Positions 14,277 through 44,423 of a DNA stretch of 64,000 nt are shown piece by piece (positions within the stretch are counted from its first letter, which is position 1; each line of letters starts with the position of its first letter). The stretch comes from Schmidtea polychroa (Eukaryota), in the NCBI GenBank assembly GCA_044892525.1, contig CM097885.1, forward strand, positions 226,424,001-226,488,000, given 5' to 3'. The notes under the pieces are model-generated. The model searched no databases, had not been told where the DNA came from, and saw only the letters and a program-made list of their open reading frames with translations. Both the position numbers and the translations under genes were made by a program.

Positions 14277-14664
14277 TGTTGGGCTGAGTCGAAGGGTAGT
14301 TGGGAAATTAGGGCAAACTTAACTAAAATAAAATAAAAAATAAAAACAAATAAATTGACAAATAAAATAGAATAAAACATAAGAAAAACAATAATTAGAA
14401 AATAGGAATTAAAACAAAAAATATAAAGATGAGAAAAAATTAAAATAGGACAATAGAATGGCGGAAAACAACGTAAAATATAGTAAATAATAAGAAAATT
14501 AAGGAAAATAAATAAAAACATAATTTTAATAAAGAAAGTAAGAAGAAATAACTAAAAAAACAAGGAAAATAAATTAAATTAATAAAATTAAGCGGTACTC
14601 AATTCTAATTGGTCCGCGCAAACAAAAAATTAATATATAAGCAGGCATTAAAAACATAACAATT

Positions 14665-14741
14665 ACTGTTAATCAAACCACCTCAATAGGTAAGTGAAAT
14701 TTAAACAATACCACTGTTAATCAAACCACCTCAATAGGTAA
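14665..14741. repeat. 29-bp direct repeat ACTGTTAATCAAACCACCTCAATAGGTAA in the LTR (enhancer-like duplication; also in the 3' LTR)
   Basis: Copies at 14665-14693 and 14713-14741. Confidence 0.85.
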
Positions 14742-17112
14742 ATCTATTCTACGACAGAACAGAACTCCAGCAACTAACGCACGATAACTCACGAGGACAA
14801 TTCCAAGATTCAAGAGATTTTTACAGAACTAGACGATATTCGAGCATTAACTGATTCGACATAGTACCCTTTTCGACTCAGCCCATACTTGTATCAATCA
14901 TTCGGTAAGGATTTTTGATTGCTTATTTTGAATTTTTAAGTAATGCGTATAGTTTAATAATATTTTTAATTTAAAAAAAATGGTTTTTCTTTTCGTTTGA
15001 TTTTCGAATGCTTTACTTAAATTAATAATTTGCTTAATAATAAATGATTTGCTCGTTAAGAATTATTGATCTTTTATGAATTAATTTGTATGAATTATTG
15101 GAGACTATTCAATTTTGCGAGAAACGTGGCGTTGAGATACTCTATGTCATGGTGTGAGGTGCCTTCGGAAGCTCCACCGGTGGACATAGGGTATTTCAAT
15201 CACGCAGCTAGATTGGGCCGAAATGTGAGGGCTTCTTCACGGGTCCAATTGCTGAAGGTGCGACTAAAATCTATAGGTAGATGGTGGCAGAAAATTGATA
15301 GTCATGTAGTGATTGAAAACAAAGATATGTAAGAAAGGAATCGGGGAATTTTGATGTATTCGCGCAGTGATTGAGGGTGTCACACTATCGTTTTCGAATG
15401 TCGTGTTTGCTAAGAAAAATTTTTTCTCCATCATCAATGTAAGTTGTGCGTCAAAAAGTGTTCAAACCTTAGTGAGGCTATCTGTGACATATCTTCGATG
15501 CTCACACTTTTCACTCAGAATCTGTTCCGACCAATTGTTAGCCTAAAACCCTTTGAACTATTATTCCGTTCACCTAAAAGTTCTCTTAAAGACATAGTTG
15601 CAAGGAAGCTCAAAGTAGATTGCTTCAGATAATTATTGGAATTATTCCAAATGACTGTTTACGGATAAATTGTAGAACTACGTAAAATAATTTATTACAG
15701 ATAATTGTTAGAACTTCATAAAACGAGTTTGTTCCAAATAAAATTTTGAATTACATAAAATAATTTACTTCAATTAAATTTTTTTGAATTATATAAAAAT
15801 ATTTACATACAATTAATTATCATAATTACATAAACTATTGGCATCAAATAATTTAACAACAAAAAATGCAACCAATTCGAACCAAGAAAATATATTTCTT
15901 CAAGTTAGCCGATAATCTTGTTAAATACGAAATTCCAGTATTACATGAGGTTGGCAATCCAGCAGAGATAGGAAAAAAATCCTCCAGCACTTAGAGAGTA
16001 GATTGGTAAACTAGGCTTGAGTAATTAAAGACGAAAAATCCACCCTTGGAGCAAGCTATATCCAACATTTGCAATACAGATAATTATAATTTTTCCAATA
16101 ATCCGGTGAGAATTAGTAAATCATCACCATATGCCGTAGAATTGTGAGCGAATACGCGGTGGATAAAATTCTGAGAGAATGCCATCATGCAAACATTCAA
16201 CGCCTGCATTTGTAGTATAATTAAGTGTGTGAAAGCGCACCTTGCATGCGTCACCAGTTGCAGACTTACCTAATAGCCAAGTACAGTAGGCAAAGTCACA
16301 CACGCATCTACTCATGTAAAATTAGATCGAACATGCCAATTAAACTACCGACAGCTATCAGATTTCACCGCTCCGGATTAAGAGTCAATCACTGGGCTGA
16401 CATTACCTTATCTACCCAGCAGGTATGGTCGACTACTAGCTCACACTGATACCGTGCTCAGTTGTTATAAAGACACTAATTTTTAATGATAAACTCGATC
16501 ATAATTATGATTATTCTCTCTTTATTATCTTAGCATGAATGGCACCGAAATTATTTCATTTTTTGACATAGTTATCATTAATATTAATATCGAATATTGT
16601 TAAATAAATATTATGTAAACCAGGTAAAACATATGTGAGTAATTAAAGAGAATGAATAAACAATTAAAAATTTAAATAACCTTCCGTTTATCCTGTAGGA
16701 ACTAATCAACAGGCATTATGGACCCCTTTTCCATAGATAGTCACTCGACCCCAGTATATGATACACTCATTAAAAGCACTCGTACGGGGGGAGAAGTCGA
16801 CAATTTAAATCGATTCTCGGTAAACGTGAAATAATGACTCCAAGCGGATTAAATAAATAATCATTTTCATCGACCTAGAATTTCTCTCACAAATAGTAAT
16901 ATCTTCCTTTTCCTTGTGCGAAATCTGGTTTGATCGATTTATCTCCTTATAATTAAAGCCCCGAAAGGGTACGAGAATCCATCGCGTAGTAGAACTTGTC
17001 TTGACTGGTAAACCCATATTTTTGTCTATGATCAGTACAGTATGAATGTAGTCAGATGGTGACACTCCCGCTGATTTAATTATTTTCATTTTCTTTTTCA
17101 CAGTCGCTCAAA

Positions 17113-17706
17113 ATGTTGCCAAATTCCAAGCCCGTTCTTCGACCTTGTTTTTCTTGCTCCGAGAGTCGGGCGCAGAGGAGCCTAATAAAAGAGCAGTCGG
17201 AGGCGCTGCACAAATTATACGTCCAGGCAGCAACTACAAGGAAGATCGCGAAGATCCCAATAAATGAAGCCAGTAACCTTTTCCCAGCACATCATGATAT
17301 CTCTGGCGGGTCTTCTTCTCCAGTCGGAAAGTCCTGCCATGGGTGCGTGGAGACCGAGCTCTCACCTAAAGAACCAGAAATCATCTTTACCGGAACCAGT
17401 AAAGTGCTACCTGCGATAGCATCCACCTCAGCAGCACCCTCGACCAACCAAACAGCATCGAAGCCAAAGCGTCGGCAATTATCGAGAGCAGAACGAAAGA
17501 AAAAACAGCGGGAACGCATAACCGCCAAACAGAACCAGAAATCGTCGGATCATCCAATCAAAGTCATCAACCCTCCTGCAGCAATCGATTTAGCATCAGT
17601 GATCTCAGGGCGAATCATCTCCGCCGCTGGTGTTACCTGGGAGGAAAACGCCTCTGAGTTTTTCGATTTGGAAGATCTATTGGCAGACTCGGAGTGGGAG
17701 AAATGA
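17113..17706 (+). CDS. LTR-encoded ORF, 5' LTR copy (197 aa, lacking 52 aa in frame)
   Basis: Identical to 43110-43859 except for a 156-bp in-frame deletion. Preceded by the acceptor-like TTTTCTTTTTCACAG (AG 17102-17103) and followed by AATAAA at 17841. Confidence 0.6.
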   Translation: MLPNSKPVLRPCFSCSESRAQRSLIKEQSEALHKLYVQAATTRKIAKIPINEASNLFPAHHDISGGSSSPVGKSCHGCVETELSPKEPEIIFTGTSKVLPAIASTSAAPSTNQTASKPKRRQLSRAERKKKQRERITAKQNQKSSDHPIKVINPPAAIDLASVISGRIISAAGVTWEENASEFFDLEDLLADSEWEK

Positions 17707-18277
17707 GAACTTCCCCGTAAAAAGTCTTCGTTCTTTGAATTGACCTGAACATTATCTGATAACATTTTACCTTGTCTCTTTTCCCGTTGTCGTGGACTTT
17801 ATTGTATAGGTGTTAGATATATTTGTGTGATAATCTTAATAATAAACCATTTTTGTCTGCATACGTTTTTTCTTGTGCCCATCTTAAGACAGTTGAGTTG
17901 AAATTGGTAAATGGTATTGAGAGTCATAAAATCATGAGGAGCATTAGTCAGTTGGTAAACTCAGCTAGAAATATTGCGATGGGGCGACAGAATGAGTAGA
18001 CGTAAGTCCTTCTATCGGCAGTCAGGGTTGGGAAGTCGAGGCCTCAGTAAGGAGTAGTCCGAAGGAGCTGGCTCACCTGCTTACTGGCGTCTCGCCGGCA
18101 TAGCACAGTTCCAACGTGAAGCAATTCACGGGTGCTATGTTGGAGTGTAAGTTATGTACGGGTCCCGCTCGGCGATGACCAAATAAATGAGGGGCGAAAT
18201 CGAGGTGGCATTCATCCTCTAGACTAAAGTTACACTAGAAAGGGGTCATCCGAGTAGTGTACCCGCAACATAATTTT

Positions 18278-18295
18278 TGGGGGCTCAGCCGGGAT
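18278..18295 (+). promoter_or_regulatory. Primer-binding site, tRNA-Pro type
   Basis: TGGGGGCTCAGCCGGGAT lies 7 nt after the 5' LTR and matches the MLV tRNA-Pro PBS TGGGGGCTCGTCCGGGAT at 16/18. Confidence 0.8.
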
Positions 18296-18595
18296 TTAGA
18301 GTGAAATTTCCATTGACTAGTGTAAACTGGATAAGGATGTTATTGAGTGAATTTCTGTCGAATAGAGTGAACTCACCGGGGATCAGTGATTTCAATGGGT
18401 TAGCGAGTGCAAATTGACTAATGCTTATCGAATCTTATTATAAATCACGAATAGAAAATAATAAAATTAAAAATATAAATAAAGCAAATTTAATGATGGA
18501 GAAATAAGATAAAAGCAAAATAATGATAACGAGTTAGAAAAGAGAATGTTTGACGAAACGAAGTCATATATTACTGAAACATTTTTTTTATAGAC

Positions 18596-19081
18596 ATGAC
18601 GGAATTCGTAGACCAGATACAACAACTAATCAACTTCATAAACATCGAGAATGACTCCCTTAAAACGCTGACACAAAAAAGAGAAAGAATTAACATCATA
18701 CTACTTCAAGCAATCGGGCAAACACCAGTCGTCCCCAACCACATGTTATTAGCCACAGGACTAAGTCACCCAGAGGGGAAGGTAAACCCGGAAACCGTGT
18801 ATCAATGGTATCAAGAGAGATTGAACCACCCAGCATTAAATCTTGATTATCAACGTATAAAAGATCCACTAAATACCATGTCAGATACAATCGAGCGGAA
18901 AATACAAGAAAAACTGACTCTACTACGAACTTGTCGTGCTTGTAAACTTCGTCCTATTCGCGTACTGTTTTTGCCGTGTGGACACCTCAGTCACTGCGAA
19001 GAATGTGTGAACGATTTAAAACGATGTACGATATGTAGGCATGAAATAAAAGAAACTCATATGGTTTATTATGGTGAATAA
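18596..19081 (+). CDS. IAP/MYLIP-type C3HC4 RING protein without BIR (161 aa), putative E3 ligase
   Basis: C-terminal CRACKLRPIRVLFLPCGHLSHCEECVNDLKRCTICRHEI. An acceptor-like TTTTTTTATAG ends 2 nt before the ATG. Confidence 0.85.
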   Translation: MTEFVDQIQQLINFINIENDSLKTLTQKRERINIILLQAIGQTPVVPNHMLLATGLSHPEGKVNPETVYQWYQERLNHPALNLDYQRIKDPLNTMSDTIERKIQEKLTLLRTCRACKLRPIRVLFLPCGHLSHCEECVNDLKRCTICRHEIKETHMVYYGE

Positions 19082-19690: not shown

Positions 19691-20017
19691 TGAGCTGTTG
19701 TATAGTGCCAGCCAGTCGTAAGATCGAGTTGTCGAATAGTCCAACCGATCAGAAGGAGGAAGATTGAGCTGTTGAATAGTGCCAGCCAGTCGTAAGATCG
19801 AGTTGTCGAATAGTCCAACCGATCAGAAGGAGGAAGATTGAGCTGTTGAATAGTGCCAGCCAGTCGTAAGATCGAGTTGTCGAATAGTCCAACCGATCAG
19901 AAGGAGGAAGATTGAGCTGTTGAATAGTGCCAGCCAGTCGTAAGATCGAGTTGTCGAATAGTCCAACCGATCAGAAGGAAGAAGATTGAGCTGTTGAATA
20001 GTGCCAGCCAGTCGTAA
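19691..20017. repeat. 74-bp tandem repeat, 4.4 copies, in the element 2 leader
   Basis: TGAGCTGTTG starts at 19691, 19765, 19839, 19913 and 19987; the units are nearly identical. Confidence 0.95.
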
Positions 20018-21382: not shown

Positions 21383-24300
21383 ATGACGAATGTCGTAAAA
21401 ACCGACGAGTATAAAGAGAAGTTCAGAGGAGAACCGTTCAACGGAAATGCAAACAAGCTAGCACCGTTCATAACTAATTTTGAAGTTTATATCACTGTGT
21501 GTGGATGGACACCCGAAGCAATTAGTAAAAGGATGCCGTTGTTTTTGTGCGATAGCGCATTAGAAGTATATTTAGAAGCTAAAGAGAGAGATACGAAATT
21601 AGAAAAGTGGGAAGATATCAAAACATTCCTGAAGAAAACCTTCGGAGCCAGTAAGCCAGTCAACCAGGCGTTGGGCGAACTAGCAAATAGGAAACAAAGA
21701 GTAAACGAATCGATAACATTATACGCCAGTGAATTGCGGAGATTAGCGAAGAAAGCAATGAATGGAAAATTACCCGAAGAAAATCTGATCGGTTATTTCA
21801 TAGAGGGATTACGCCGAGAAGAAGTAAGAGCCTCAGTAGGTTGTCAAATGTGCAAAACATTAGAGGAAGCCATAGATTGGGCTACAAGATGCGAGCTCCA
21901 CCTTCCAGCTCAAATGAATATTATGCAAGAGGAGGGAAGGATAGCGACAGCAATAGCGAAAGCGGATAACGGAGATAACAACAATCAAGAACTGAAAATG
22001 AATCAATTTATACCAGGAGCGCACCAAATTTTCAAACCACCACAAGGACGATCAAATGGGAATAATGGTAATCGTAACAACCTAAATAATGAGAACAATT
22101 TCAATAATCGACGAAATATGAACGATAACAAGCAGTGCCGAACATGCGGTAAACCAGGACACTGGGACAGAGATTGCTATAGAAATTCAAATTGTAATCG
22201 TTGCGGACGGCGTGGACATACCGAAAATGTATGCCAATTAAGAGGTTGTTTTAACTGTGGTCAGCCAGGTCACATCTCCAGAGATTGCCGAGAAAGGGGC
22301 CAACAACAACGACCACCACCGCGAAATAATAATTATATGGCGAATCCGCAAAGACAAAACAACCCTAGCGAAGGAAAACAAATGAACGTTATGCAGGAAA
22401 TCTCGCAGATGAAACAGATGATGCAACAAATGATGAGACCGAGACCGGAATCAGCACCACAACAAACCCAGAATATACGTATGATGAGGAGTACCGAAAA
22501 TCTCAACAATTATGAAGTGCATCAACATGTACAAGAATGGCAAAGACTACAGGCCGAGGAAGAGAGGATAAAACAAGAACGCAACCAACAACGACAAGAA
22601 CAACCATTGCGAATTAATATGATGAAGTTAGTAAAAGACATGAAAAGCCAGTATTGCTACAATTACGGGAAAAACCCAAGGGTAGTACCCATGACTGAAC
22701 CAGAAAAGGTAACAGAAACAACAACGGAAATGAAAACAGAGAATTCAACCACGATTTTAAAAGGAAACCAGAGAATTCAGAAAATATTCTGGAAAAAGAT
22801 AAAAGATAAAATCGAAAAAGAACATAATAAAGCGAAAGCCGAGACAGAAGATGAAAATAACAAGAGCAAGGAACAAACCAGTCAATTAAACCACCAAATG
22901 CTACAAGAATTAGAATCAGAAGAAACAACGATATTCGAAAGAAAGAAACTAAAGAGAGTACCAAGGATGAGAAATTTGCAAATCAATATGATGAAAAGGA
23001 CAAAAGATGTAGCATCGTCAGACGAAGAAGAAGATTATGTAAGTAGTTTGGGGGGAGAAATACTACAGCTAAACGAAATAAGCGAACCTCCAAAAGGGGA
23101 AATCAAAGAGGAAGAAAGCGAAAGCGAGATAACAAGTGGAAGTGAAGACGAGGATATCGAAATAAAGTTGAGAAAAGCAAGGGAGGAAGCGATAAAACAG
23201 GTAGCCGAAATACTCCCGGCGGTAGTGAGAAACCAAGAGTTCATCGACGTAATATCATTCAGGCGATTCGTGCAAAAAGTGATGAAATTGGAAAGAAACG
23301 AGAAAGATTTAATACCAAACGAGGAAAAATCAATTATAAAAAAGTATATGGAAAAAATGAAGCAGGCAGATACCACGCGGTATGTAATAAAAATCGGAAC
23401 GAGTAGAGGACTTGAAAGAATGTGGATAAAAAATACAGTCACCGACGAACTTTTCGATTGGATACGAGAACATTTGGGAGATTCGAGAAAGAAAGAATAT
23501 CTGTATCAATACCAAGGAGAACAGATCAAACCAGACATGCACTTAGTAGATGCACTAATATGGCCAGGAGAAACGCAAATACTGAAGTTGCATAAAGAAA
23601 AACAACCAGCCAACCTTTACGATTGGGCTAAAGACGCCAAGGCAGAATATGATTTTAATATCAAATTGAAATTAGAACAAATAAAACAATGTACTCTGAG
23701 ACGAAACCTGGATAAGCTGATCAAAAAAATTCAAGAACAAGTAGAAGACAACTGGGATTTACTCATCACCAGACGAGCCCCAGCCATGTACGAACTAATG
23801 ACCCAATTGCGAGATACAGAAATGCTCCGGATGAGTGATTGGAGAACCATAAATTTGATCCACAAATATGGAAGGTTAAAAGAAACCCAGCCACAGAGGT
23901 TGGAAATAACCATATGGTTACCGAACGAGGAAAAACGACGAATAAAAATGAGCAATCAGAGTACAGTGGATGACTTGGTATCAAAAATAAACCAAGAGAT
24001 AACAGAAAAGGTACGTAGCGAAAGTATTGATGGTATGGTGGATGATGTAGTCATGATGTACGATAAAATAATATTACGAGCGGAGGACGACACCTCGTTA
24101 AGCGAAATGGGTATGTGGGACAATCATCAGATAATCAGGATAGTACCAATGGATGAATTTCGAACAAGAGATGTAACCTATCAAAAAGAAATACGAGACC
24201 GGATGAAAACGTTATATCAAAAATCTACGGAAATAATTAAAATCCACCAACAATGGTTAAAAGAAAAAGAACTACAAGGAAAAATCACGAAACTAAGCAC

Positions 24301-35346: not shown

Positions 35347-35706
35347 ATGGATCAAGGAAATAACGAAATGAACCACAATACAGTAACTGAAGAATTATGG
35401 AAGCAACAATGTGCCGTATTAGCACAATTAGTGTCCAATTTGCAAGAACAAGGATTGACGATGCACAGAAACCTAATCGAGAGTATGAATAGAGGATTTA
35501 GTTATTTGAAAATAATTGAAGACCAGAGGTTGAAAATCGAACAAATGCAAAGAGAGATAGAGAGGATAACCCAATATAGCCGTAGACAGGAAATCGAGCT
35601 AGACAGAATGATGGAGGAAGCAGAACAGACAGAAATAGAAGACTGGTCGGAATGGCTAATGAATAGAGAGGAGAGCGGACACGAAGCCGACTCTTCCGAA
35701 CCCTAA
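35347..35706 (+). CDS. Small coiled-coil accessory protein
   Basis: ATG at 35347 within the track ORF 35323-35706; heptad-like Q/E/R-rich; homologue in element 1. Confidence 0.65.
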   Translation: MDQGNNEMNHNTVTEELWKQQCAVLAQLVSNLQEQGLTMHRNLIESMNRGFSYLKIIEDQRLKIEQMQREIERITQYSRRQEIELDRMMEEAEQTEIEDWSEWLMNREESGHEADSSEP

Positions 35707-35791: not shown

Positions 35792-37180
35792 ATGGATAAA
35801 CGACAAAGAGAAGAGTTCAGAGAGATTGTCGAGCAAGTCCGAAAATCTACAACGATCAGAATACACAAACATGTTATGTGCGGAATATGTGAAAAGTTGT
35901 TAAAGGAACCTCACCAAACGCAATGTGGATGCAGAGTATGTAAAGAATGTATCAGTGAAGCAATAAAGAATAGACCACAGAGGTGCCCGGTGTGTAAAGA
36001 GACACTAATATCGAGTTTAGAAGACACTAACGAGGATAAAGCCGCAGTGAAAGACATGTTAAACACCAATCTGGGATGTAAAAATGCCCCATGCGAATGG
36101 AAAGGAGTAATATGGAAGGTAGTACAACATATGGGAGAATGTATGTACAGAATTGGCCAGTGTGAAAGGTGCCATAAAACCATTCGAGCAAGCGAAGAAA
36201 AAGAGCATCAAAGGCAGTGTGAAGAGAGATTAGAAAGATGTGAACACTGTGGAGAAATAGATACGTGGAAAAATCTCACCCTCAAACATCACAATGTCCA
36301 AGAGGAGAGAGTATGTGCAGAGTTCAGTGGGGAATGCCCAAACGGATGTAACCAAGGGGAAATAATGAAGGTGGCACAGCATCTAAGGGAATGCGAAAAG
36401 AAAAGAATGACATGTGTACTAGGTAGATGGGGTTGTCAGAAACTACTACACCGAGGTGAGTTACCACATCATTTAGTAGAAAATGCTTCAACCCACGCAG
36501 AAATGTGGTCGACTGCGTTACAAGAAAGCGAAGAGAAAGTAAAACAAATGGAGATAGAGATAACATCGTTGAAAGTGTTAGTCAAAGAACTACTAGAAGA
36601 AAGGGAAGCGTTAGAAGAAGCCCGAGCAAACATAAAGATGCAAATAAACCGAATAGAAATCAGTAATAATCAGGCCAAGGAGCTACATCAGAAAATACGG
36701 GAAATAAATCTAAATGAGATAACCCCAACAGCACCCTACATATGGAAAATAACGGGAGTAAAAGAAAGAATACGAAAAGCAAAAACCGGAGAAGAGACAA
36801 GAATAACAAGTCCTGCATTCCATTCTTGGAAAAATGGGTACAAAATGAAAATGAAGATATATCCCAACGGGGACGGAACCGGAGTAGATACGCACTTTTC
36901 GATTTTCTTTCTGTTATGTAAAGGGGAATACGACGAAATAATAGAGTGGCCGTTCCAGGCAAAAATCGATATTGCACTAATGAATGACCGAAGCATCCAC
37001 GAACAAAGCTTCAAGACAACTGGAAACCAAATGTGTTACCAGAGACCTACGGCAGAAGAAGGATCAGCAACAGGAGCACCTACGTTCATCCTACAACAAA
37101 AAGTAGAAGATATGGCAAGAAATGACACGGTGTATATCAAGATGACCGTGAGGAAAGAGGAGAAGGGTAGAACGGAGTAA
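35792..37180 (+). CDS. TRAF: Full-length intronless TRAF-family protein (RING - TRAF zinc fingers - coiled coil - MATH)
   Basis: RING CGICEKLLKEPHQTQCGCRVCKEC...CPVC; tandem TRAF-type zinc fingers; MATH motifs YIWKI, SPAF, GYKM, YPNGDG, HFSIF, KGEYD, EWPF, YQRP. Confidence 0.93.
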   Translation: MDKRQREEFREIVEQVRKSTTIRIHKHVMCGICEKLLKEPHQTQCGCRVCKECISEAIKNRPQRCPVCKETLISSLEDTNEDKAAVKDMLNTNLGCKNAPCEWKGVIWKVVQHMGECMYRIGQCERCHKTIRASEEKEHQRQCEERLERCEHCGEIDTWKNLTLKHHNVQEERVCAEFSGECPNGCNQGEIMKVAQHLRECEKKRMTCVLGRWGCQKLLHRGELPHHLVENASTHAEMWSTALQESEEKVKQMEIEITSLKVLVKELLEEREALEEARANIKMQINRIEISNNQAKELHQKIREINLNEITPTAPYIWKITGVKERIRKAKTGEETRITSPAFHSWKNGYKMKMKIYPNGDGTGVDTHFSIFFLLCKGEYDEIIEWPFQAKIDIALMNDRSIHEQSFKTTGNQMCYQRPTAEEGSATGAPTFILQQKVEDMARNDTVYIKMTVRKEEKGRTE

Positions 37181-37373: not shown

Positions 37374-38429
37374 ATGACACAAGAGAAAATAACCGAAACT
37401 GCGATAGCCCCAACCAATGTCAACAAGACACAAATTCCCCGAGAACATAACAAAAAATGGAACAAAGTAATGTTCCAACTAACTAATCTCACCCGAAATC
37501 ACATCGAAGAAACTAGAGAGGATGAGAATAGTCAATACCAATGGTTAATACACAACTTAAGAGCGGAAGCAGAAGCATGCAAAAGAGCATCAAAATGGGC
37601 GTCACTAGAAAATACCCGCCAAGAAGCGCACAGCCACTACTTAAAGCAGCTAGTGCAGGAAGCGAGAAAGAGACTTACCGATGAAAACACCAAGCGCGAA
37701 GCGGAAAAGCAAATAGAAGGAAGGAAAATGATGCACTTAGTGGCAGAAGCGAGAAAATGGAAAAGACAAAGCAATGAAATAAAAAAAGAGATGAAAGAAT
37801 TGCCCATGAGACTCGGATATGAGAGCGAACAGGGTAAATGGGAGGAAAATTTAATAATAAAGGAAGAACTGAAACGGTTGAAAAAGGTCGCCGCCCGAAG
37901 CCAAACATGGCAGATGAAGGCTATGGAGTTTGAACGACATTTGGCAATAAAATGCGACATAAGAGAGCACGAGAATGCCGCAATGGAAGAGATGATAACC
38001 CAGCAAGCAGGACGGGTTGTAGAATTAGTAAATCAGGTCGAAGAGATGAAAAGAGACCTTAATGGATTACAAGGATCGTTAGAACAAAGAAACATGGTCC
38101 TGGCGAAAAAAAACAGAAAATTAGAAAACGAGAGGAAAATGTATACCGAAAATATCAAAAACTTGGAAATAGAAATTGAAAGATGGAAGGGCGACGAGAA
38201 AATCAAGGCCTTAGATAGACAAGTAGAGGCGAAAGACGAAGAGACAAGGTATCTCACTTATCTGCTCGACGAAGAGCTGAATATCACTCGAGCTCTAAGA
38301 GACGAAGTTAATGAATTGAGAGCTCAAATCCCCCAATATTACCTACCCTATGACCCTATTGCGATACAGTTGCATCCAGCGGTCGATAGTGATGAAGGTT
38401 ATGTGGGACAGGAGGAAACCTTCGTATAA
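37374..38429 (+). CDS. Orphan long coiled-coil protein (351 aa)
   Basis: Intact ORF with E/K/R/L heptad character and the element's A-rich codon usage; AATAAA at 38435. Confidence 0.75.
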   Translation: MTQEKITETAIAPTNVNKTQIPREHNKKWNKVMFQLTNLTRNHIEETREDENSQYQWLIHNLRAEAEACKRASKWASLENTRQEAHSHYLKQLVQEARKRLTDENTKREAEKQIEGRKMMHLVAEARKWKRQSNEIKKEMKELPMRLGYESEQGKWEENLIIKEELKRLKKVAARSQTWQMKAMEFERHLAIKCDIREHENAAMEEMITQQAGRVVELVNQVEEMKRDLNGLQGSLEQRNMVLAKKNRKLENERKMYTENIKNLEIEIERWKGDEKIKALDRQVEAKDEETRYLTYLLDEELNITRALRDEVNELRAQIPQYYLPYDPIAIQLHPAVDSDEGYVGQEETFV

Positions 38430-38577
38430 GGGTGAATAAAAAGATAAAAACAAAAATCGGGACGTATATCCCAAACAAAAAAAAAAAAAAAACAAAACAA
38501 AAAAAAAAAAAAAAAAATTTAAAGTATGATAAAAGTATTCAAGGGACTGTAACCCGAACTATTAAAATTTTATATAA

Positions 38578-39339
38578 ATGTATATGTATAAGTCACACTA
38601 TAGCGCACCATTAACTGTACATATTACAGATATGAAAATCGAGGAAATAATAGAAATTACGAGCGACGTAGAAGAGGGAGAGATTGAGGCAGAAACAACA
38701 GAAACACAAACGTTAAAGGCCAAGTTACGGGAAGAGAAGTACGAAAACGAGAGACTAGTAAACAAATATATAGAAGACCGAAAAATGATTAAAATACTAA
38801 AGAAGGAGTGCGAAGCGTTAGGAGAAATAAAGAGAGAAGCTGAAGAGAAGAATGAATGGTTGCAAGAACAAAGAACACGAGGAAGAAACTGGGAAAAGAT
38901 TGCAGAGGAACTATGGCAAGAGAGGGCAAGCTTCAAGGCAGAAGAAGTAATCCAGGATTATTGGAAAACAGAGGCGAAAGAACACCAAATAACTATAAAT
39001 AAATTAAATCGACAATTGGAGGAAAAACAACGAGAAAGTGAGGAAATGAAAAAATGGATTCGCAAGTATCAAGAGATCGAGAGAAAACAACAACAACAAC
39101 AACAACGAAACCTTTCGCAGGAAAACGAACAAGATTTCCTACAAATCGAACTAAAAAGGAATCTCGACAAAAAACGGGAAGAAATTAAGAGACTGAAAAA
39201 GGAGATAAGGCACATGAAAAGGGAGGCCCGTGAAAAGAACAGACAGTTGGAAATGCTGCCCGAGTTAAGACACAGAGTCATTAAAGCGGAATCCACCCTG
39301 ATGAGAATCGCCGAAAATAACCCAAACCAGAATCATTAA
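38578..39339 (+). CDS. Orphan coiled-coil protein (likely start ATG 38632)
   Basis: E/K/Q/R-rich helical ORF; an acceptor-like TTACAG ends at 38629, just before ATG 38632. Confidence 0.7.
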   Translation: MYMYKSHYSAPLTVHITDMKIEEIIEITSDVEEGEIEAETTETQTLKAKLREEKYENERLVNKYIEDRKMIKILKKECEALGEIKREAEEKNEWLQEQRTRGRNWEKIAEELWQERASFKAEEVIQDYWKTEAKEHQITINKLNRQLEEKQRESEEMKKWIRKYQEIERKQQQQQQRNLSQENEQDFLQIELKRNLDKKREEIKRLKKEIRHMKREAREKNRQLEMLPELRHRVIKAESTLMRIAENNPNQNH

Positions 39340-39380: not shown

Positions 39381-39950
39381 ATGTATAATAGTATCATGCG
39401 AGGCGAGATGATGATAACAATGACGGTATTGATGATTCTGACGGAGAACAAACAAGTAAACGCCCAACCGAAAATCGTGCGAGATTACCGAAATCAAAAT
39501 CAAGAACCTAAACGAGAATCCGGCCAATGCACATACCCTATGACAGTAAAAATCCATATCATCCAAACCCTTCAATCAACCCGTTCACACATCAACAACA
39601 TCCAAACAATGTGTAAAAAGAATCCCATTTGTAAAATGATAAACAAACAAATCCTCGAACAAATCCAACAATTCGACCAGTTAGAACAACAAATGCAACA
39701 AGAGAATTTTGAAAATCTTGTAGAAAAGCCAAAAACACCTCCCGAAATCAATGACACCCATTATCTCATATATGTGGTGATCGCAGAAACCCTCCTCCTA
39801 TGTCTACCAATACTCATGAAGATTTACGAAGTTAGAAATAAATGTAGAATCTCGACACCAATAAGAGTAACCTCGAACAGAAATCCTCAAGAAGTGCCGC
39901 TGACAAATCTTAACCCAACCCCATTCCGACCTCGAATCCCGAGTAACTAA
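39381..39950 (+). CDS. Small predicted type I membrane protein
   Basis: N-terminal hydrophobic MMITMTVLMILT, helical ectodomain with 3 Cys, TM YLIYVVIAETLLLCLPILM, Pro-rich tail. Confidence 0.6.
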   Translation: MYNSIMRGEMMITMTVLMILTENKQVNAQPKIVRDYRNQNQEPKRESGQCTYPMTVKIHIIQTLQSTRSHINNIQTMCKKNPICKMINKQILEQIQQFDQLEQQMQQENFENLVEKPKTPPEINDTHYLIYVVIAETLLLCLPILMKIYEVRNKCRISTPIRVTSNRNPQEVPLTNLNPTPFRPRIPSN

Positions 39951-40273
39951 CCAATCCAGCCGAATTCTAACAATCAGACCTATCTCAACATCAATACCCG
40001 AACCAACCAACAACCGCCAGCAGAAGCATCAAATGGTTAGCAGTTCATAAACTCTAACTCAAACATTGGTGTTATCATATGCAGAAACTTTTATTGTATA
40101 TACAAACTATCACCTTAAGTGATACTTGCTTGGTCTTGATTTGACCTATATCTTAGAATAAAATTGTTTTTGTTATTGTATTATAATTGTTTCGATATAT
40201 CCTTTTTATGAATGCATGAAGTAAGATAACTATGCAATTGCGGGACGCAATTTTGATGGGTCCCCGAGTGATT

Positions 40274-43200
40274 TGTTGGGCTGAGTCGAAGGGTAGTTGG
40301 GAAATTAGGGCAAACTTAACTAAAATAAAATAAAAAATAAAAACAAATAAATTGACAAATAAAATAGAATAAAACATAAGAAAAACAATAATTAGAAAAT
40401 AGGAATTAAAACAAAAAATATAAAGATGAGAAAAAATTAAAATAGGACAATAGAATGGCGGAAAACAACGTAAAATATAGTAAATAATAAGAAAATTAAG
40501 GAAAATAAATAAAAACATAATTTTAATAAAGAAAGTAAGAAGAAATAACTAAAAAAACAAGGAAAATAAATTAAATTAATAAAATTAAGCGGTACTCAAT
40601 TCTAATTGGTCCGCGCAAACAAAAAATTAATATATAAGCAGGCATTAAAAACATAACAATTACTGTTAATCAAACCACCTCAATAGGTAAGTGAAATTTA
40701 AACAATACCACTGTTAATCAAACCACCTCAATAGGTAAATCTATTCTACGACAGAACAGAACTCCAGCAACTAACGCACGATAACTCACGAGGACAATTC
40801 CAAGATTCAAGAGATTTTTACAGAACTAGACGATATTCGAGCATTAACTGATTCGACATAGTACCCTTTTCGACTCAGCCCATACTTGTATCAATCATTC
40901 GGTAAGGATTTTTGATTGCTTATTTTGAATTTTTAAGTAATGCGTATAGTTTAATAATATTTTTAATTTAAAAAAAATGGTTTTTCTTTTCGTTTGATTT
41001 TCGAATGCTTTACTTAAATTAATAATTTGCTTAATAATAAATGATTTGCTCGTTAAGAATTATTGATCTTTTATGAATTAATTTGTATGAATTATTGGAG
41101 ACTATTCAATTTTGCGAGAAACGTGGCGTTGAGATACTCTATGTCATGGTGTGAGGTGCCTTCGGAAGCTCCACCGGTGGACATAGGGTATTTCAATCAC
41201 GCAGCTAGATTGGGCCGAAATGTGAGGGCTTCTTCACGGGTCCAATTGCTGAAGGTGCGACTAAAATCTATAGGTAGATGGTGGCAGAAAATTGATAGTC
41301 ATGTAGTGATTGAAAACAAAGATATGTAAGAAAGGAATCGGGGAATTTTGATGTTTTCGCGCAGTGATTGAGGGTGTCACACTATCGTTTTCGAATGTCG
41401 TGTTTGCTAAGAAAAATTTTTTCTCCATCATCAATGTAAGTTGTGCGTCAAAAAGTGTTCAAACCTTAGTGAGGCTATCTGTGACATATCTTCGATGCTC
41501 ACACTTTTCACTCAGAATCTGTTCCGACCAATTGTTAGCCTAAAACCCTTTGAACTATTATTCCGTTCACCTAAAAGTTCTCTTAAAGACATAGTTGCAA
41601 GGAAGCTCAAAGTAGATTGCTTCAGATAATTATTGGAATTATTCCAAATGACTGTTTACGGATAAATTGTAGAACTACGTAAAATAATTTATTACAGATA
41701 ATTGTTAGAACTTCATAAAACGAGTTTGTTCCAAATAAAATTTTGAATTACATAAAATAATTTACTTCAATTAAATTTTTTTGAATTATATAAAAATATT
41801 TACATACAATTAATTATCATAATTACATAAACTATTGGCATCAAATAATTTAACAACAAAAAATGCAACCAATTCGAACCAAGAAAATATATTTCTTCAA
41901 GTTAGCCGATAATCTTGTTAAATACGAAATTCCAGTATTACATGAGGTTGGCAATCCAGCAGAGATAGGAAAAAAATCCTCCAGCACTTAGAGAGTAGAT
42001 TGGTAAACTAGGCTTGAGTAATTAAAGACGAAAAATCCACCCTTGGAGCAAGCTATATCCAACATTTGCAATACAGATAATTATAATTTTTCCAATAATC
42101 CGGTGAGAATTAGTAAATCATCACCATATGCCGTAGAATTGTGAGCGAATACGCGGTGGATAAAATTCTGAGAGAATGCCATCATGCAAACATTCAACGC
42201 CTGCATTTGTAGTATAATTAAGTGTGTGAAAGCGCACCTTGCATGCGTCACCAGTTGCAGACTTACCTAATAGCCAAGTACAGTAGGCAAAGTCACACAC
42301 GCATCTACTCATGTAAAATTAGATCGAACATGCCAATTAAACTACCGACAGCTATCAGATTTCACCGCTCCGGATTAAGAGTCAATCACTGGGCTGACAT
42401 TACCTTATCTACCCAGCAGGTATGGTCGACTACTAGCTCACACTGATACCGTGCTCAGTTGTTATAAAGACACTAATTTTTAATGATAAACTCGATCATA
42501 ATTATGATTATTCTCTCTTTATTATCTTAGCATGAATGGCACCGAAATTATTTCATTTTTTGACATAGTTATCATTAATATTAATATCGAATATTGTTAA
42601 ATAAATATTATGTAAACCAGGTAAAACATATGTGAGTAATTAAAGAGAATGAATAAACAATTAAAAATTTAAATAACCTTCCGTTTATCCTGTAGGAACT
42701 AATCAACAGGCATTATGGACCCCTTTTCCATAGATAGTCACTCGACCCCAGTATATGATACACTCATTAAAAGCACTCGTACGGGGGGAGAAGTCGACAA
42801 TTTAAATCGATTCTCGGTAAACGTGAAATAATGACTCCAAGCGGATTAAATAAATAATCATTTTCATCGACCTAGAATTTCTCTCACAAATAGTAATATC
42901 TTCCTTTTCCTTGTGCGAAATCTGGTTTGATCGATTTATCTCCTTATAATTAAAGCCCCGAAAGGGTACGAGAATCCATCGCGTAGTAGAACTTGTCTTG
43001 ACTGGTAAACCCATATTTTTGTCTATGATCAGTACAGTATGAATGTAGTCAGATGGTGACACTCCCGCTGATTTAATTATTTTCATTTTCTTTTTCACAG
43101 TCGCTCAAAATGTTGCCAAATTCCAAGCCCGTTCTTCGACCTTGTTTTTCTTGCTCCGACAAGAATTCAATTATCAAAGAGCTCCAGGCCCAAATCGAAA

Positions 43201-44423
43201 AGCACAAAAGAAGGATAGATGAGTTAGAGGGGACATGGTTTAGTCCCACCCAGATGAAGGAGGCTCAGAAGAAGCTGCACCGAAGCGAGCACTGTAGAGA
43301 CGCGTTGATTTCCGAGAGTCGGGCGCAGAGGAGCCTAATAAAAGAGCAGTCGGAGGCGCTGCACAAATTATACGTCCAGGCAGCAACTACAAGGAAGATC
43401 GCGAAGATCCCAATAAATGAAGCCAGTAACCTTTTCCCAGCACATCATGATATCTCTGGCGGGTCTTCTTCTCCAGTCGGAAAGTCCTGCCATGGGTGCG
43501 TGGAGACCGAGCTCTCACCTAAAGAACCAGAAATCATCTTTACCGGAACCAGTAAAGTGCTACCTGCGATAGCATCCACCTCAGCAGCACCCTCGACCAA
43601 CCAAACAGCATCGAAGCCAAAGCGTCGGCAATTATCGAGAGCAGAACGAAAGAAAAAACAGCGGGAACGCATAACCGCCAAACAGAACCAGAAATCGTCG
43701 GATCATCCAATCAAAGTCATCAACCCTCCTGCAGCAATCGATTTAGCATCAGTGATCTCAGGGCGAATCATCTCCGCCGCTGGTGTTACCTGGGAGGAAA
43801 ACGCCTCTGAGTTTTTCGATTTGGAAGATCTATTGGCAGACTCGGAGTGGGAGAAATGAGAACTTCCCCGTAAAAAGTCTTCGTTCTTTGAATTGACCTG
43901 AACATTATCTGATAACATTTTACCTTGTCTCTTTTCCCGTTGTCGTGGACTTTATTGTATAGGTGTTAGATATATTTGTGTGATAATCTTAATAATAAAC
44001 CATTTTTGTCTGCATACGTTTTTTCTTGTGCCCATCTTAAGACAGTTGAGTTGAAATTGGTAAATGGTATTGAGAGTCATAAAATCATGAGGAGCATTAG
44101 TCAGTTGGTAAACTCAGCTAGAAATATTGCGATGGGGCGACGGAATGAGTAGACGTAAGTCCTTCTATCGGCAGTCAGGGTTGGGAAGTCGAGGCCTCAG
44201 TAAGGAGTAGTCCGAAGGAGCTGGCTCACCTGCTTACTGGCGTCTCGCCGGCATAGCACAGTTCCAACGTGAAGCAATTCACGGGTGCTATGTTGGAGTG
44301 TAAGTTATGTACGGGTCCCGCTCGGCGATGACCAAATAAATGAGGGGCGAAATCGAGGTGGCATTCATCCTCTAGACTAAAGTTACACTAGAAAGGGGTC
44401 ATCCGAGTAGTGTACCCGCAACA
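40274..44423 (+). repeat. Element 2 3' LTR (4150 bp)
   Basis: TGTTG...CAACA; copy of 14277-18270 plus 156 bp (43160-43315). Confidence 0.97.
43110..43859 (+). CDS. LTR-encoded protein, full-length copy (249 aa), putative regulator
   Basis: CxxC, coiled coil, second CxxC, basic KPKRRQLSRAERKKKQRER, acidic-hydrophobic end EFFDLEDLLADSEWEK. Acceptor AG at 43099-43100; AATAAA at 43994. Confidence 0.65.
   Translation: MLPNSKPVLRPCFSCSDKNSIIKELQAQIEKHKRRIDELEGTWFSPTQMKEAQKKLHRSEHCRDALISESRAQRSLIKEQSEALHKLYVQAATTRKIAKIPINEASNLFPAHHDISGGSSSPVGKSCHGCVETELSPKEPEIIFTGTSKVLPAIASTSAAPSTNQTASKPKRRQLSRAERKKKQRERITAKQNQKSSDHPIKVINPPAAIDLASVISGRIISAAGVTWEENASEFFDLEDLLADSEWEK

What the first reader, a model, noticed from the sequence alone, without database searches (positions are those of the whole stretch)
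14277..44423. Giant (30 kb) enveloped Ty3/gypsy element carrying an apoptosis/immune-signalling toolkit
Seen: a bounded element (LTRs, TTAA TSD, PBS) with gag-pol, plus Ubl, Bcl-2-like, ankyrin, TRAF, IAP-type RING, two or three membrane proteins, coiled-coil ORFs and an LTR ORF. All are on one strand and intronless; the internal ORFs share the element's A-rich coding bias. Knowledge: typical Metaviridae are ~5-15 kb with gag/pol/(env); Bcl-2, IAP-RING and ankyrin modulators are hallmarks of large DNA viruses (pox-, herpes-, baculoviruses). Inference: a 'complex' infectious retroelement that manipulates host cell death and TNF/NF-kB-type signalling; I do not recognise it as a described lineage.
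Basis: partly seen in the sequence, partly recalled or inferred. Interest (0 to 1): 0.97.

Follow-up and report, generated by a model that had tools for sequence, protein, structure and literature searches.

The report
Giant Burro-type planarian retrovirus-like element
The 30-kb element is real and almost intact, but it belongs to an already published family, the giant "Burro" Ty3/gypsy retrovirus-like elements of planarian flatworms, and this copy only arranges the family's cell-death and signalling genes differently.

Summary
Window 14277-44423 is one 30,147-bp LTR element. Its two ~4-kb LTRs differ by 2 mismatches and one 156-bp indel, end in TG...CA, and are flanked by TTAA on both sides. 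A tRNA-type primer-binding site follows the 5' LTR.

All genes lie on one strand and share A-rich composition:
- an IAP-type RING ORF;
- a giant gag / 3x CCHC / Ubl-like / Bcl-2-like / env / PR-RT-RH-IN / ankyrin polyprotein gene;
- a TRAF-like ORF (RING plus MATH);
- two coiled-coil ORFs and a small membrane-protein ORF.

Env is a class III fusion glycoprotein of the chuvirus/Monjiviricetes type. Pol is closest to Ty3.

The claim that this is an undescribed lineage does not hold. Size, gag-env-pol order and the TRAF/Ubl/Bcl-2/ankyrin/IAP cargo match the published Burro family (GYPSM1, Jurka 2007; Grohme 2018; Arkhipova and Yushenova 2019). The neighbouring host gene places the window in a free-living flatworm.

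This copy differs in three ways: TRAF is a separate ORF 3' of pol, no BIR or dUTPase domain was found, and the polyprotein gene has one frame change. Manipulation of host cell death and signalling is still inference.

Verdict: new member of a known kind, moderate interest.

The parts
14273..14276 (.). Left target-site duplication (TTAA)
   Evidence: Read directly; the same 4 bases follow the 3' LTR.
14277..18270 (+). 5' LTR, 3,994 bp, TG...CA
   Evidence: Self-BLAST and global alignment against the 3' LTR: 2 mismatches and one 156-bp indel.
17113..17706 (+). ORF inside the 5' LTR (197 aa); no known domain, GC-richer than the rest of the element
18278..18296 (+). Primer-binding-site-like stretch; starts with TGG and has the layout of a tRNA 3' end
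   Evidence: Read directly. No tRNA gene in the window to match it against.
18596..19081 (+). IAP-type RING ORF (161 aa; RING at 18926-19054); no BIR domain
   Evidence: PF13920 E 8e-12. Best PDB matches are cIAP2, cIAP1 and XIAP RINGs, E 2e-11 to 1e-7.
19691..20017 (.). 74-bp x 4.4 tandem array in the leader
   Evidence: TRF, 99% matches.
21383..35186 (+). gag-env-pol-ankyrin polyprotein gene, about 4,600 codons. It is read in two frames: one frame change, no internal stops.
   Evidence: Relatives P0001, P0004, P0005, L004 and P0132 are continuous through the same region.
21536..21817 (+). Gag domain (Retrotrans_gag)
   Evidence: PF03732 E 3e-9.
22136..22288 (+). Three CCHC zinc knuckles
   Evidence: PF00098 E 5e-11; pattern count.
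23879..24013 (+). Ubiquitin-fold-like module (weak support)
   Evidence: PI3K_rbd E 0.003, below Pfam's cutoff.
24851..24955 (+). Ubiquitin-like module (weak support)
   Evidence: PF00240 E 0.048. Ubiquitin-variant PDB chains E 0.03-0.04. Relatives P0004 and L003 hit PF00240 at E 4e-5 and 0.005.
25829..26047 (+). Bcl-2-like module (BH1-BH2 region), probable
   Evidence: PF00452 E 0.073 here. The homologous stretch of P0132 hits PF00452 at E 8e-5. A 3-sequence profile gives 59 of 60 best PDB hits as Bcl-xL or BAX, E 0.09-0.6. The AF2 model was too poor to decide.
26177..27953 (+). Env: signal-like segment, class III fusion glycoprotein ectodomain, TM anchor (27864-27920). It contains the gene's single frame change.
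   Evidence: PF24664 E 2e-59; TM. Foldseek against PDB: the top 50 are all class III fusogens, best E 2e-5. Foldseek against BFVD: chu-, qin- and xinmo-like virus glycoproteins, E 1e-20.
28521..28796 (+). Aspartic protease (DTG)
   Evidence: PF00077 E 1e-8.
29460..30512 (+). Reverse transcriptase (YIDD) and RNase H
   Evidence: PF00078 E 1e-35; PF17917 E 5e-39. Best PDB match is the Ty3 Gag-Pol polyprotein 7q5b, E 6e-120.
30834..31403 (+). Integrase (H2C2 zinc domain and core)
   Evidence: PF17921 E 9e-21; PF00665 E 1e-12.
32256..33506 (+). Post-integrase region with two ankyrin-repeat blocks (32256-32495, 33387-33506)
   Evidence: PF12796 E 1e-16; PF13637 E 1e-8.
34173..35021 (+). C-terminal membrane module of the polyprotein: signal-like segment 34173-34229 and TM segment 34965-35021
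   Evidence: Hydropathy scan; translation.
35347..35706 (+). Small acidic, Q-rich ORF (119 aa), no known domain
35792..37180 (+). TRAF-like ORF (462 aa): RING 35876-35995, zinc-finger and coiled-coil region, MATH 36737-37150
   Evidence: PF21355 E 3e-26 plus RING families. PDB TRAF1/2/3 E ~1e-28; TRAF6 and TRAF5 RING-zinc-finger region E 1e-14.
37374..38429 (+). Coiled-coil-rich ORF (351 aa), no known domain
38435..38517 (+). AATAAA followed after 32 nt by a 45-nt A-run, the only long A-run in the element
38578..39339 (+). Coiled-coil-rich ORF (253 aa), no known domain
39381..39950 (+). Small membrane-protein ORF (189 aa): signal-like N-terminus, TM 39762-39818
40274..44423 (+). 3' LTR, 4,150 bp
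43110..43859 (+). ORF inside the 3' LTR (249 aa). It carries 52 extra in-frame residues compared with the 5' LTR copy.
44424..44427 (.). Right target-site duplication (TTAA)

Best explanation
This is a very recently inserted, nearly intact copy of a Burro-type element: a giant Ty3/gypsy (Metaviridae) retrovirus-like LTR element of a free-living flatworm, most likely a planarian close to Schmidtea.

Shown here:
- One insertion event: paired LTRs, TG...CA ends, a 4-bp duplication and a tRNA-type primer site.
- Ty3-like PR-RT-RH-IN with catalytic motifs present.
- gag with three zinc knuckles.
- A class III, chuvirus-like fusion glycoprotein encoded between gag and pol.
- Cargo modules that have the element's own base composition.

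Inferred, not shown:
- The element replicates by the ordinary LTR-retroelement cycle, with the giant polyprotein cut by its own protease.
- The env gives particles a route from expressing somatic cells to the dividing stem or germ cells.
- The IAP-type RING, TRAF-like, Bcl-2-like, Ubl and ankyrin modules mimic host ubiquitin, cell-death and TRAF-type signalling components, keeping the expressing cell alive and unresponsive.

This particular copy has one frame change inside the env part of the polyprotein gene, so as it stands it may not express env-pol normally.
For: - Anatomy and youth of the insertion.
- Domain content.
- Env class.
- Relatives with the same gag-(Ubl/Bcl-2)-signal peptide-env-PR-RT-RH-IN backbone in one reading frame, 49-52% identical in RT-IN and 37-39% in env.
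- Host: the adjacent gene is RNA polymerase III RPC1. Every named hit near the top is from a flatworm (45-46% identity), and an unnamed UniParc protein is 92% identical. The flanks are 70-75% A+T, as reported for Schmidtea (PMC11410931).
- The same UniParc accession range (I infer the same proteome) holds fragments of a 33-46% identical polyprotein with TRAF zinc fingers and MATH embedded in it. This is the arrangement published for Burro-1.
- Literature match on size, three CCHC knuckles, MATH_TRAF, Ubi2/SUMO-like, BCL2-like, in-frame env with mononegavirus hits, PR-RT-RH-IN and ankyrin: PMC6431247.
- gag-env-pol order with gB-type env in Platyhelminthes: PMC13524379.
- Cargo shares the element's composition, unlike the host gene.
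- BURRO1 is transcribed in differentiated intestinal cells and is under PIWI control in S. mediterranea (PMC8532177).
Against: - No Burro reference sequence could be fetched, so family membership rests on architecture, host and distant protein relatives, not on direct alignment.
- The host species is not identified by name.
- Differences from the published descriptions: TRAF is a separate ORF 3' of pol, not inside the polyprotein (Burro-1) or upstream (the Girardia element); no BIR domain was found, only an IAP-type RING; no dUTPase-like domain was found between PR and RT.
- The Ubl and Bcl-2-like assignments are each below the significance threshold when taken alone.
- No polypurine tract was recognised.
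- The functions of the cargo, and any cell-to-cell spread, are untested.
Confidence: 0.85

Rival explanations
1. A genuinely undescribed lineage of 'complex' enveloped retroelement, unrelated to any published family.
For: No close protein relatives were found. The best env-pol relatives are 37-52% identical. The gag-distal 1,096 residues found only 3 relatives among 1.84 billion cluster representatives. The accessory ORFs have no hits in the related loci. The cargo arrangement differs from the published Burro descriptions.
Against: Host group, size, gene order and the specific, unusual set of cargo domains all coincide with the published Burro family. Fragments with the Burro-1-type arrangement, in what I infer is a closely related host, are homologous to this element's polyprotein and TRAF. 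TE proteins are usually masked from protein databases, so a lack of close hits is expected.
Confidence: 0.07
2. The cargo is not part of the element: either a misassembly or nested mosaic of unrelated elements, or host genes trapped between two LTRs of separate insertions.
For: The length is unusual. An internal poly(A)-like tract at 38473-38517 shows that at least one segment has a separate history. The two LTRs differ by a 156-bp indel.
Against: The same 4-bp duplication flanks both ends. The LTRs are otherwise 99.95% identical. All ORFs are on one strand, have no visible introns, and share A-rich composition that differs from the neighbouring host gene. No second set of LTRs or TE genes lies inside the element. 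The same cargo families are published for Burro elements, and homologous TRAF and MATH sequences sit inside a relative's polyprotein.
Confidence: 0.04
3. Same element, different role for the cargo. The RING, TRAF, Ubl, Bcl-2-like and ankyrin modules mainly serve the element's own cycle (ubiquitin-dependent trafficking or budding, particle assembly, control of polyprotein turnover) rather than suppressing host cell death or immune signalling.
For: Most modules are fused into the structural and enzymatic polyprotein next to gag and env. Two accessory ORFs are plain coiled-coil proteins. Ubiquitin-system involvement in retroviral budding is established knowledge.
Against: A Bcl-2-like fold, an IAP-type RING and a TRAF MATH domain are jointly characteristic of cell-death and TNF-receptor-type signalling. 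Large DNA viruses use them for host manipulation (established knowledge). Neither role has been tested.
Confidence: 0.25
4. The change of reading frame inside the polyprotein gene is not damage but a programmed frameshift or a sequencing or assembly error. In that case this copy is fully coding.
For: The insertion is very young (2 LTR mismatches). There are no stops anywhere in about 4,600 codons. Ty-type elements are known to use +1 frameshifting (established knowledge). One relative (L003) has an in-frame stop at the equivalent gag-side / env boundary, which hints at regulated read-through there.
Against: In five relatives the frame is continuous through this region, and the published Burro-1 ORF is a single 4,873-aa frame. 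The frame change falls inside env rather than at a gag/pol-type boundary.
Confidence: 0.3

Closest known systems
[quoted passage not shown] 2018; Arkhipova and Yushenova 2019, PMC6431247)
   Same: - Gypsy-like LTR element over 30 kb in a planarian.
- gag with three CCHC knuckles.
- Ubl/SUMO-like and BCL2-like motifs.
- Env with mononegavirus-type hits between gag and pol.
- PR-RT-RH-IN, ankyrin repeats, a MATH/TRAF module and an IAP-related module.
- Tandem repeats in the non-coding part.
   Different: - TRAF is here a stand-alone ORF 3' of pol, not part of the polyprotein.
- Only an IAP-type RING was found, no BIR.
- No dUTPase-like domain was detected.
- The polyprotein is split into two frames.
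- Three further 3' ORFs (two coiled-coil, one membrane) and an internal poly(A)-like tract are not mentioned in the descriptions I could read.
- Sequence identity to the reference entries could not be measured.
Burro-like element of Girardia (Dugesia) tigrina (described in PMC6431247)
   Same: Giant gag-env-pol polyprotein with the TRAF module as a separate accessory ORF.
   Different: In that element the TRAF ORF is upstream, gag has two knuckles, and a midasin-like region is reported. Here the TRAF ORF is downstream, gag has three knuckles, and no midasin-like hit was seen.
Env-carrying Ty3/gypsy elements with gB-type (class III) ENV and GAG-ENV-POL order in Platyhelminthes, Nematoda and Bryozoa (PMC13524379)
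   Same: Ty3/gypsy pol, a class III env, and env placed between gag and pol. Compact relatives of this kind were also recovered here (L004, a 2,693-aa polyprotein without cargo).
   Different: Those elements are of ordinary size. This one adds roughly 15 kb of cargo and 4-kb LTRs.
Drosophila gypsy and other insect errantiviruses; mosquito BEL/Pao elements with a chuvirus-like glycoprotein (PMC7642597)
   Same: LTR retroelements that captured a viral fusion glycoprotein. The mosquito case uses the same Jingchuvirales-type glycoprotein family.
   Different: In those elements env is a separate 3' ORF (gypsy uses an F-type class I env). The BEL/Pao elements belong to a different pol superfamily. 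Neither carries signalling cargo.
Bcl-2, IAP and ankyrin genes of large DNA viruses (pox-, herpes- and baculoviruses)
   Same: The same kinds of captured host cell-death and signalling modules.
   Different: Those are DNA viruses with hundreds of kilobases of genome. Here the modules ride on a reverse-transcribing element and are mostly fused into its polyprotein. The analogy is functional only and is untested.

Membership tests
Ty3/gypsy LTR retroelement (Metaviridae) | Paired LTRs with TG...CA ends and a short target-site duplication | tested here: met
Ty3/gypsy LTR retroelement (Metaviridae) | Pol domain order PR-RT-RH-IN, with closest similarity to Ty3-type RT and IN | tested here: met
   Domain order. 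Best solved relative is the Ty3 Gag-Pol polyprotein, E 6e-120, well ahead of caulimovirus and retrovirus RTs.
Ty3/gypsy LTR retroelement (Metaviridae) | gag with zinc knuckle(s) | tested here: met
   PF03732 and three CCHC knuckles.
Ty3/gypsy LTR retroelement (Metaviridae) | tRNA primer-binding site after the 5' LTR and a polypurine tract before the 3' LTR | tested here: inconclusive
   A PBS-like 19-mer with tRNA 3'-end layout is present, but no tRNA was available to match it. No clear purine run lies before the 3' LTR.
Burro family (planarian giant gypsy-like elements) | Total length above 30 kb with a very long internal region | tested here: met
   30,147 bp in total; 22 kb internal.
Burro family (planarian giant gypsy-like elements) | Host is a dugesiid planarian | tested here: inconclusive
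   The flanking RPC1 gene is of flatworm type. It is 92% identical to an unnamed UniParc protein and 45-46% identical to neodermatan proteins. The flanks are AT-rich. The species name was not obtainable.
Burro family (planarian giant gypsy-like elements) | Env encoded in frame between gag and pol inside one giant polyprotein | tested here: met
   The position is met. The single-frame criterion is met in relatives and interrupted once in this copy.
Burro family (planarian giant gypsy-like elements) | MATH/TRAF, Ubl/SUMO-like, BCL2-like and ankyrin cargo | tested here: met
   TRAF and ankyrin are strongly supported. Ubl and Bcl-2-like are weakly but consistently supported. The location of TRAF differs from the published elements.
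Burro family (planarian giant gypsy-like elements) | BIR domain and a dUTPase-like domain between PR and RT, as reported for Burro-1 | tested here: not met
   Only an IAP-type RING was found. No PF00692 hit at E <= 5 in the PR-to-RT interval. These domains are reported features of some members, not stated as defining features.
Burro family (planarian giant gypsy-like elements) | Sequence relatedness to the reference entries (GYPSM1, Burro-1 to -4) | not testable with these tools
   No reference sequence was reachable, and the Grohme 2018 paper is not held. Indirect evidence: homology to UniParc fragments with the Burro-1-type arrangement.
Class III viral fusion glycoproteins (gB / G / GP64 type; Pfam Monjiviricetes_fusion) | Sequence membership of PF24664 and a class III fold | tested here: met
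   PF24664 E 2e-59. The Foldseek hits are exclusively class III fusogens and chu-like virus glycoproteins at E 1e-20. The AF2 model is of low overall confidence (pLDDT 47.5; residues 22-175 score 74-88), so the fold evidence is supportive rather than strong.
Bcl-2 family | Bcl-2 helical bundle with BH1 and BH2 motifs | tested here: inconclusive
   PF00452 E 0.073, below the cutoff. Relative P0132 hits at E 8e-5. Profile hits are almost all Bcl-xL or BAX but at E >= 0.09. The AF2 model has pLDDT 45, and Foldseek gave nothing significant.
TRAF family | N-terminal RING and zinc fingers, coiled coil, C-terminal MATH (TRAF-C) | tested here: met
IAP family | At least one BIR domain (the RING is optional) | tested here: not met
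   Only the C-terminal RING resembles IAPs. The ORF is IAP-RING-like, not an IAP.

The most novel reading that the evidence does not exclude
This is an undescribed Burro sub-lineage from a planarian other than S. mediterranea. Its signalling cargo has been moved out of the polyprotein into a 3' cassette of five stand-alone ORFs, in the manner of a complex retrovirus. At least part of that cassette entered as a retro-copied polyadenylated mRNA, leaving an AATAAA signal and a 45-nt A-run at 38435-38517. If so, the family is still shuffling and acquiring host signalling genes.
Probability: 0.35. Interest if true: 0.5.

Novelty: new member of a known kind. Interest (0 to 1): 0.35.

Why it matters
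Burro elements are the largest known LTR retroelements. They are the only ones reported to combine a captured viral fusion glycoprotein with a set of cell-death and ubiquitin-signalling modules, and whether these modules act on the host is an open question. A young, almost intact copy from a second host species, with the same modules in a different arrangement, gives comparative material. It shows which modules are conserved (Ubl, Bcl-2-like, env, ankyrin, TRAF) and which move or drop out (TRAF position, BIR, dUTPase). It also carries a possible footprint of how cargo is acquired. It does not open a new category.

Tried and rejected
- Exact-sequence look-ups of three element ORFs in public assemblies found nothing, so no second copy or source record was identified.
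- A word-based search with the env piece alone found no stand-alone glycoproteins. PDB sequence searches with env and with the Bcl-2-like piece found nothing meaningful.
- The AF2 model of the Bcl-2-like region (2-sequence alignment) had pLDDT 45, and its Foldseek result is not significant. I use it only as a non-contradiction.
- No dUTPase, BIR, midasin or chromodomain hit.
- No tRNA genes or Rfam families in the window, so the primer tRNA is unassigned.
- Grohme et al. 2018 is not in the held library, and the eLife 2026 paper has no held supplements. Burro details therefore come from the 2019 review.
- BLAST found no internal duplication in the post-integrase region and no similarity among the accessory ORFs. 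The accessory ORFs have no hits in related loci L001-L005.
- I considered a programmed frameshift and kept it as a rival rather than the main reading.
- I considered a piggyBac-type origin because of the TTAA. I rejected it because the element has LTRs, a PBS and an integrase, and no transposase or terminal inverted repeats.

Full report

Yes. Self-comparison of the window finds one pair of long direct repeats, at 14277-18270 and 40274-44423. A global alignment gives 2 mismatches and a single 156-bp indel over 3,994 aligned bases. Both repeats begin with TG and end with CA. The four bases TTAA lie immediately outside both ends; I estimate about a 1% chance of such a match in these AT-rich flanks.

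Seven bases after the 5' LTR, a 19-nt stretch begins with TGG and reads as the complement of a tRNA 3' end. No tRNA gene is present in the window to confirm the match. I could not recognise a polypurine tract in front of the 3' LTR.

2. WHAT IT ENCODES

Every ORF of note lies on the + strand.

Leader. It holds a 161-aa ORF whose C-terminal RING is closest to the RINGs of cIAP1/2 and XIAP (PF13920 E 8e-12; PDB E 2e-11). No BIR domain is present. A 74-bp x 4.4 tandem array follows.

Polyprotein gene, 21383-35186, about 4,600 codons with no internal stop. Its parts, in order:
- gag: PF03732 and three CCHC knuckles.
- A long acidic and coiled region with two weak ubiquitin-fold matches (PI3K_rbd E 0.003; ubiquitin E 0.048; ubiquitin-variant PDB chains E 0.03).
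- A probable Bcl-2-like module (details below).
- A signal-like segment, a fusion-glycoprotein ectodomain (PF24664 Monjiviricetes_fusion, E 2e-59) and a TM anchor.
- Protease (DTG), RT (YIDD), RNase H and integrase.
- Two ankyrin blocks.
- A C-terminal module with signal-like and TM segments.

Downstream ORFs:
- A 119-aa acidic ORF.
- A 462-aa TRAF-like protein with RING, zinc-finger and coiled-coil region, and MATH domain (PF21355 E 3e-26; PDB TRAF1/2/3 E ~1e-28; TRAF6/5 RING-zinc-finger E 1e-14).
- Two coiled-coil-rich ORFs of 351 and 253 aa.
- A 189-aa ORF with a signal-like N-terminus and one TM segment.

LTR ORF. Each LTR carries an ORF with no known domain. The 3' copy has 52 extra in-frame residues.

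Bcl-2-like module. The evidence is weak but consistent:
- PF00452 scores E 0.073 in the window.
- An exhaustive search of 1.84 billion cluster representatives with the gag-distal 1,096 residues returned only three proteins. One of them, P0132, aligns to this stretch, itself hits PF00452 at E 8e-5, and then runs on in one frame into a signal peptide and the start of the env family.
- A three-sequence profile (window, P0132, L003) searched against PDB sequences gave Bcl-xL or BAX in 59 of the 60 best chains, but at E 0.09-0.6.
- The AlphaFold model built from two sequences was too poor to use (pLDDT 45).

I call the module probable.

Env class. The AlphaFold model from six sequences is poor overall (pLDDT 47.5), but residues 22-175 score 74-88.
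- Against the PDB, all 50 listed Foldseek matches are class III fusogens: baculovirus GP64, herpesvirus gB, thogotovirus Gp and VSV G, best E 2e-5.
- Against predicted viral structures, the best matches are glycoproteins of chu-, qin-, xinmo- and nyami-like negative-strand RNA viruses of arthropods, at E 1e-20 to 1e-13.

Together with the Pfam hit, this places env in the class III, Jingchuvirales/Mononegavirales-type family.

Pol. The best solved relative is the Ty3 Gag-Pol polyprotein (7q5b, E 6e-120), followed by Ty3 RT, a caulimovirus RT and then retroviral RTs. The element is a Ty3/gypsy element.

Composition. The element's internal ORFs, cargo included, have AT skew 0.23-0.52 and 39-47% A at third codon positions. 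The neighbouring host gene has 0.07 and 34%. The cargo has therefore resided in the element long enough to take on its composition. The LTR ORF is the exception (49% GC).

3. STATE OF THE COPY

The insertion is very young (2 LTR mismatches). I count one break in the whole element: a single change of reading frame in the gag-env-pol gene, within its env part. There are no premature stops, insertions or deletions that I could recognise. In relatives P0001, P0004, P0005, L004 and P0132 the corresponding region is one continuous frame, and the published Burro-1 ORF is a single 4,873-aa frame. The change may be a mutation, an assembly error or a programmed shift; I keep these possibilities as a rival.

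Disclosure. To establish that the two ORFs form one gene, I reasoned about which part of env the frame change falls in, and my second checkpoint note says so in words. I derived, printed and saved no position. I made no joined reading.

4. SURROUNDINGS AND HOST

About 1.7 kb downstream of the 3' LTR, on the same strand, lie exons of the largest subunit of RNA polymerase III (46132-52799). The large exon is 92% identical, with evenly spread differences, to an unnamed UniParc protein (UPI0006095425). It is 45-46% identical to RPC1 of Schistosoma, Sparganum, Clonorchis, Taenia and other flatworms, which fill the top of the named hits. The non-element flanks are 70-75% A+T, as reported for Schmidtea genomes (PMC11410931).

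The host is therefore a free-living flatworm, a close relative of, but not the same species as, the source of that UniParc entry. I infer that source is S. mediterranea, but could not show it.

Upstream, at 3029-7600, lies a 1,523-aa gag-CCHC ORF. It is 40% identical to this element's gag and 46% identical to another UniParc fragment (P0130). No env or pol follows it. It is a second, different Burro-like relic.

5. RELATIVES

A word-based search of 5.8 billion proteins with the env region, allowing giant proteins as candidates, found five polyproteins of 2,855-4,057 aa from assembled ENA samples.
- All have PF24664 followed by PR-RT-RH-IN.
- They are 37-39% identical to the window in env and 49-52% in RT-IN.
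- Four of the five also align with the window's gag-CCHC region, P0003 being the exception. Pfam finds the CCHC knuckle in P0004 and P0005, which sit on L001-type contigs that are almost entirely this one ORF.
- P0004 also has a ubiquitin domain, and its ankyrin repeats lie between env and PR.
- P0001's contig carries two exonuclease-domain ORFs after the polyprotein.

A metagenome scan added L004, a compact 2,693-aa gag-env-PR-RT-RH-IN polyprotein with no cargo. It also added L003, in which an in-frame stop separates the Bcl-2-like end from the env signal peptide.

The backbone of gag, then env, then pol in one frame is thus a wider lineage, and the cargo varies between members. None of the window's accessory ORFs has a hit in these loci.

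UniParc fragments P0130 and P0131 lie in the same accession range as the 92% RPC1 hit, which I take to mean the same proteome. They show polyprotein segments homologous to this element (33-56% identity) fused in frame to TRAF zinc fingers and a MATH domain, and these are 36% identical to the window's free-standing TRAF.

6. COMPARISON WITH WHAT IS KNOWN

Arkhipova and Yushenova (2019, PMC6431247, section 7) summarise the Burro elements of the planarian S. mediterranea (GYPSM1 of Jurka 2007; Burro-1 to -4 of Grohme et al. 2018):
- gypsy-like, over 30 kb, thousands of copies;
- a 4,873-aa polyprotein with gag and three CCHC knuckles, MATH_TRAF, Ubi2/SUMO-like and BCL2-like motifs;
- an env region with hits to mononegavirus fusion glycoproteins, in frame between gag and pol;
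- PR, a dUTPase-like domain, RT, RH, IN, ankyrin and BIR.

[quoted passage not shown] They also raise the idea that Burro elements are integrated proviruses that meddle with apoptosis and ubiquitination.

A 2026 survey reports that platyhelminth env-carrying Ty3/gypsy elements carry only gB-type env, in gag-env-pol order (PMC13524379). BURRO1 RNA is enriched in differentiated intestinal cells and rises when the PIWI protein SMEDWI-2 is depleted (PMC8532177).

The window's element fits this family in host group, size, order and cargo. It differs in the following ways:
- TRAF is a stand-alone ORF 3' of pol.
- It has an IAP-type RING without a BIR.
- No dUTPase-like domain is detectable.
- It has three further 3' ORFs.

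I could not obtain a Burro reference sequence, so I could not measure direct identity.

7. HOW IT MOST LIKELY WORKS

Shown: the hallmarks of one integrase-mediated insertion of a reverse-transcribed copy, and coding capacity for capsid, protease, RT/RNase H, integrase and a membrane-anchored class III fusogen.

Inferred from established knowledge of LTR retroelements and errantiviruses: transcription from the 5' LTR, tRNA-primed reverse transcription in gag particles, and cleavage of the giant polyprotein by the element's protease into structural, enzymatic and cargo modules.

Inferred by analogy with Drosophila gypsy and from the published BURRO1 expression pattern: env lets particles made in differentiated cells, where PIWI control is weaker, reach the dividing stem or germ cells, where a new insertion can be inherited.

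Inferred from the domain families only: the IAP-type RING, TRAF-like, Bcl-2-like, Ubl and ankyrin modules act as mimics or decoys of host ubiquitin-ligase, cell-death and TRAF-adaptor components. The alternative, that they serve the element's own trafficking and assembly, is listed as a rival.

8. ONE DETAIL I DID NOT FIND IN THE PAPERS I READ

Six bases after the stop of ORF 37374-38429 there is an AATAAA. Thirty-two bases further on comes a 45-nt A-run, the only A-run of 12 or more in the element. This looks like the 3' end of a polyadenylated mRNA copied into the element during reverse transcription. It suggests how at least part of the 3' cassette was acquired. This is an inference from the sequence pattern alone.

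9. VERDICT

The claim of an unrecognised lineage is not: this is a new member, with a rearranged cargo layout and probably from a second host species, of the published Burro family. Functional claims about cell death and signalling remain hypotheses. Interest is moderate (0.35).

Noticed in passing
window 38435-38517: An AATAAA lies 6 nt after the stop of ORF 37374-38429. It is followed, after 32 nt, by a 45-nt A-run with three C interruptions, the only long A-run in the element. This looks like the retained 3' end of a retro-copied polyadenylated mRNA inside the accessory cassette.
   Followed up: partly
window 3029-7600 (A-rich region about 1-10000): A second Burro-like relic: a 1,523-aa gag-CCHC-X ORF, 40% identical to the main element's gag and 46% identical to UniParc fragment P0130. 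No env or pol lies behind it, and no LTR pair for it is in the window.
   Followed up: partly
window 46132-52799: Exons of the host RNA polymerase III largest subunit (RPC1) on the same strand. The first detectable exon starts about 1.7 kb downstream of the 3' LTR, so the element sits just upstream of an essential gene.
   Followed up: partly
window 43110-43859 versus 17113-17706: The ORF inside the LTR differs between the two LTRs by a 156-bp (52-codon) in-frame segment present only in the 3' LTR. Otherwise the two copies are identical. The ORF is GC-richer (49%) than the rest of the element and has no known domain.
   Followed up: partly
window 19691-20017: A 74-bp tandem array (4.4 copies, 99% matches) lies in the leader between the RING ORF and gag. 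Tandem repeats are also drawn in the published Burro maps.
   Followed up: no
L002 12411-15688: A distant relative's contig carries two ORFs with RNase_T exonuclease domains after its polyprotein. Cargo therefore differs between members of the wider gag-env-pol lineage.
   Followed up: partly
L003 about 2899-3360: In this metagenomic relative an in-frame stop separates the Bcl-2-like C-terminus from the env signal peptide, which has no start codon of its own. This could reflect read-through or a damaged copy.
   Followed up: no
window 9808-10503 and 58901-59595; 11439-13547; 14113-14244: An unrelated dispersed repeat (82% identity between its two copies) and several AT-rich satellite arrays. 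The element is inserted at the edge of such an array.
   Followed up: no
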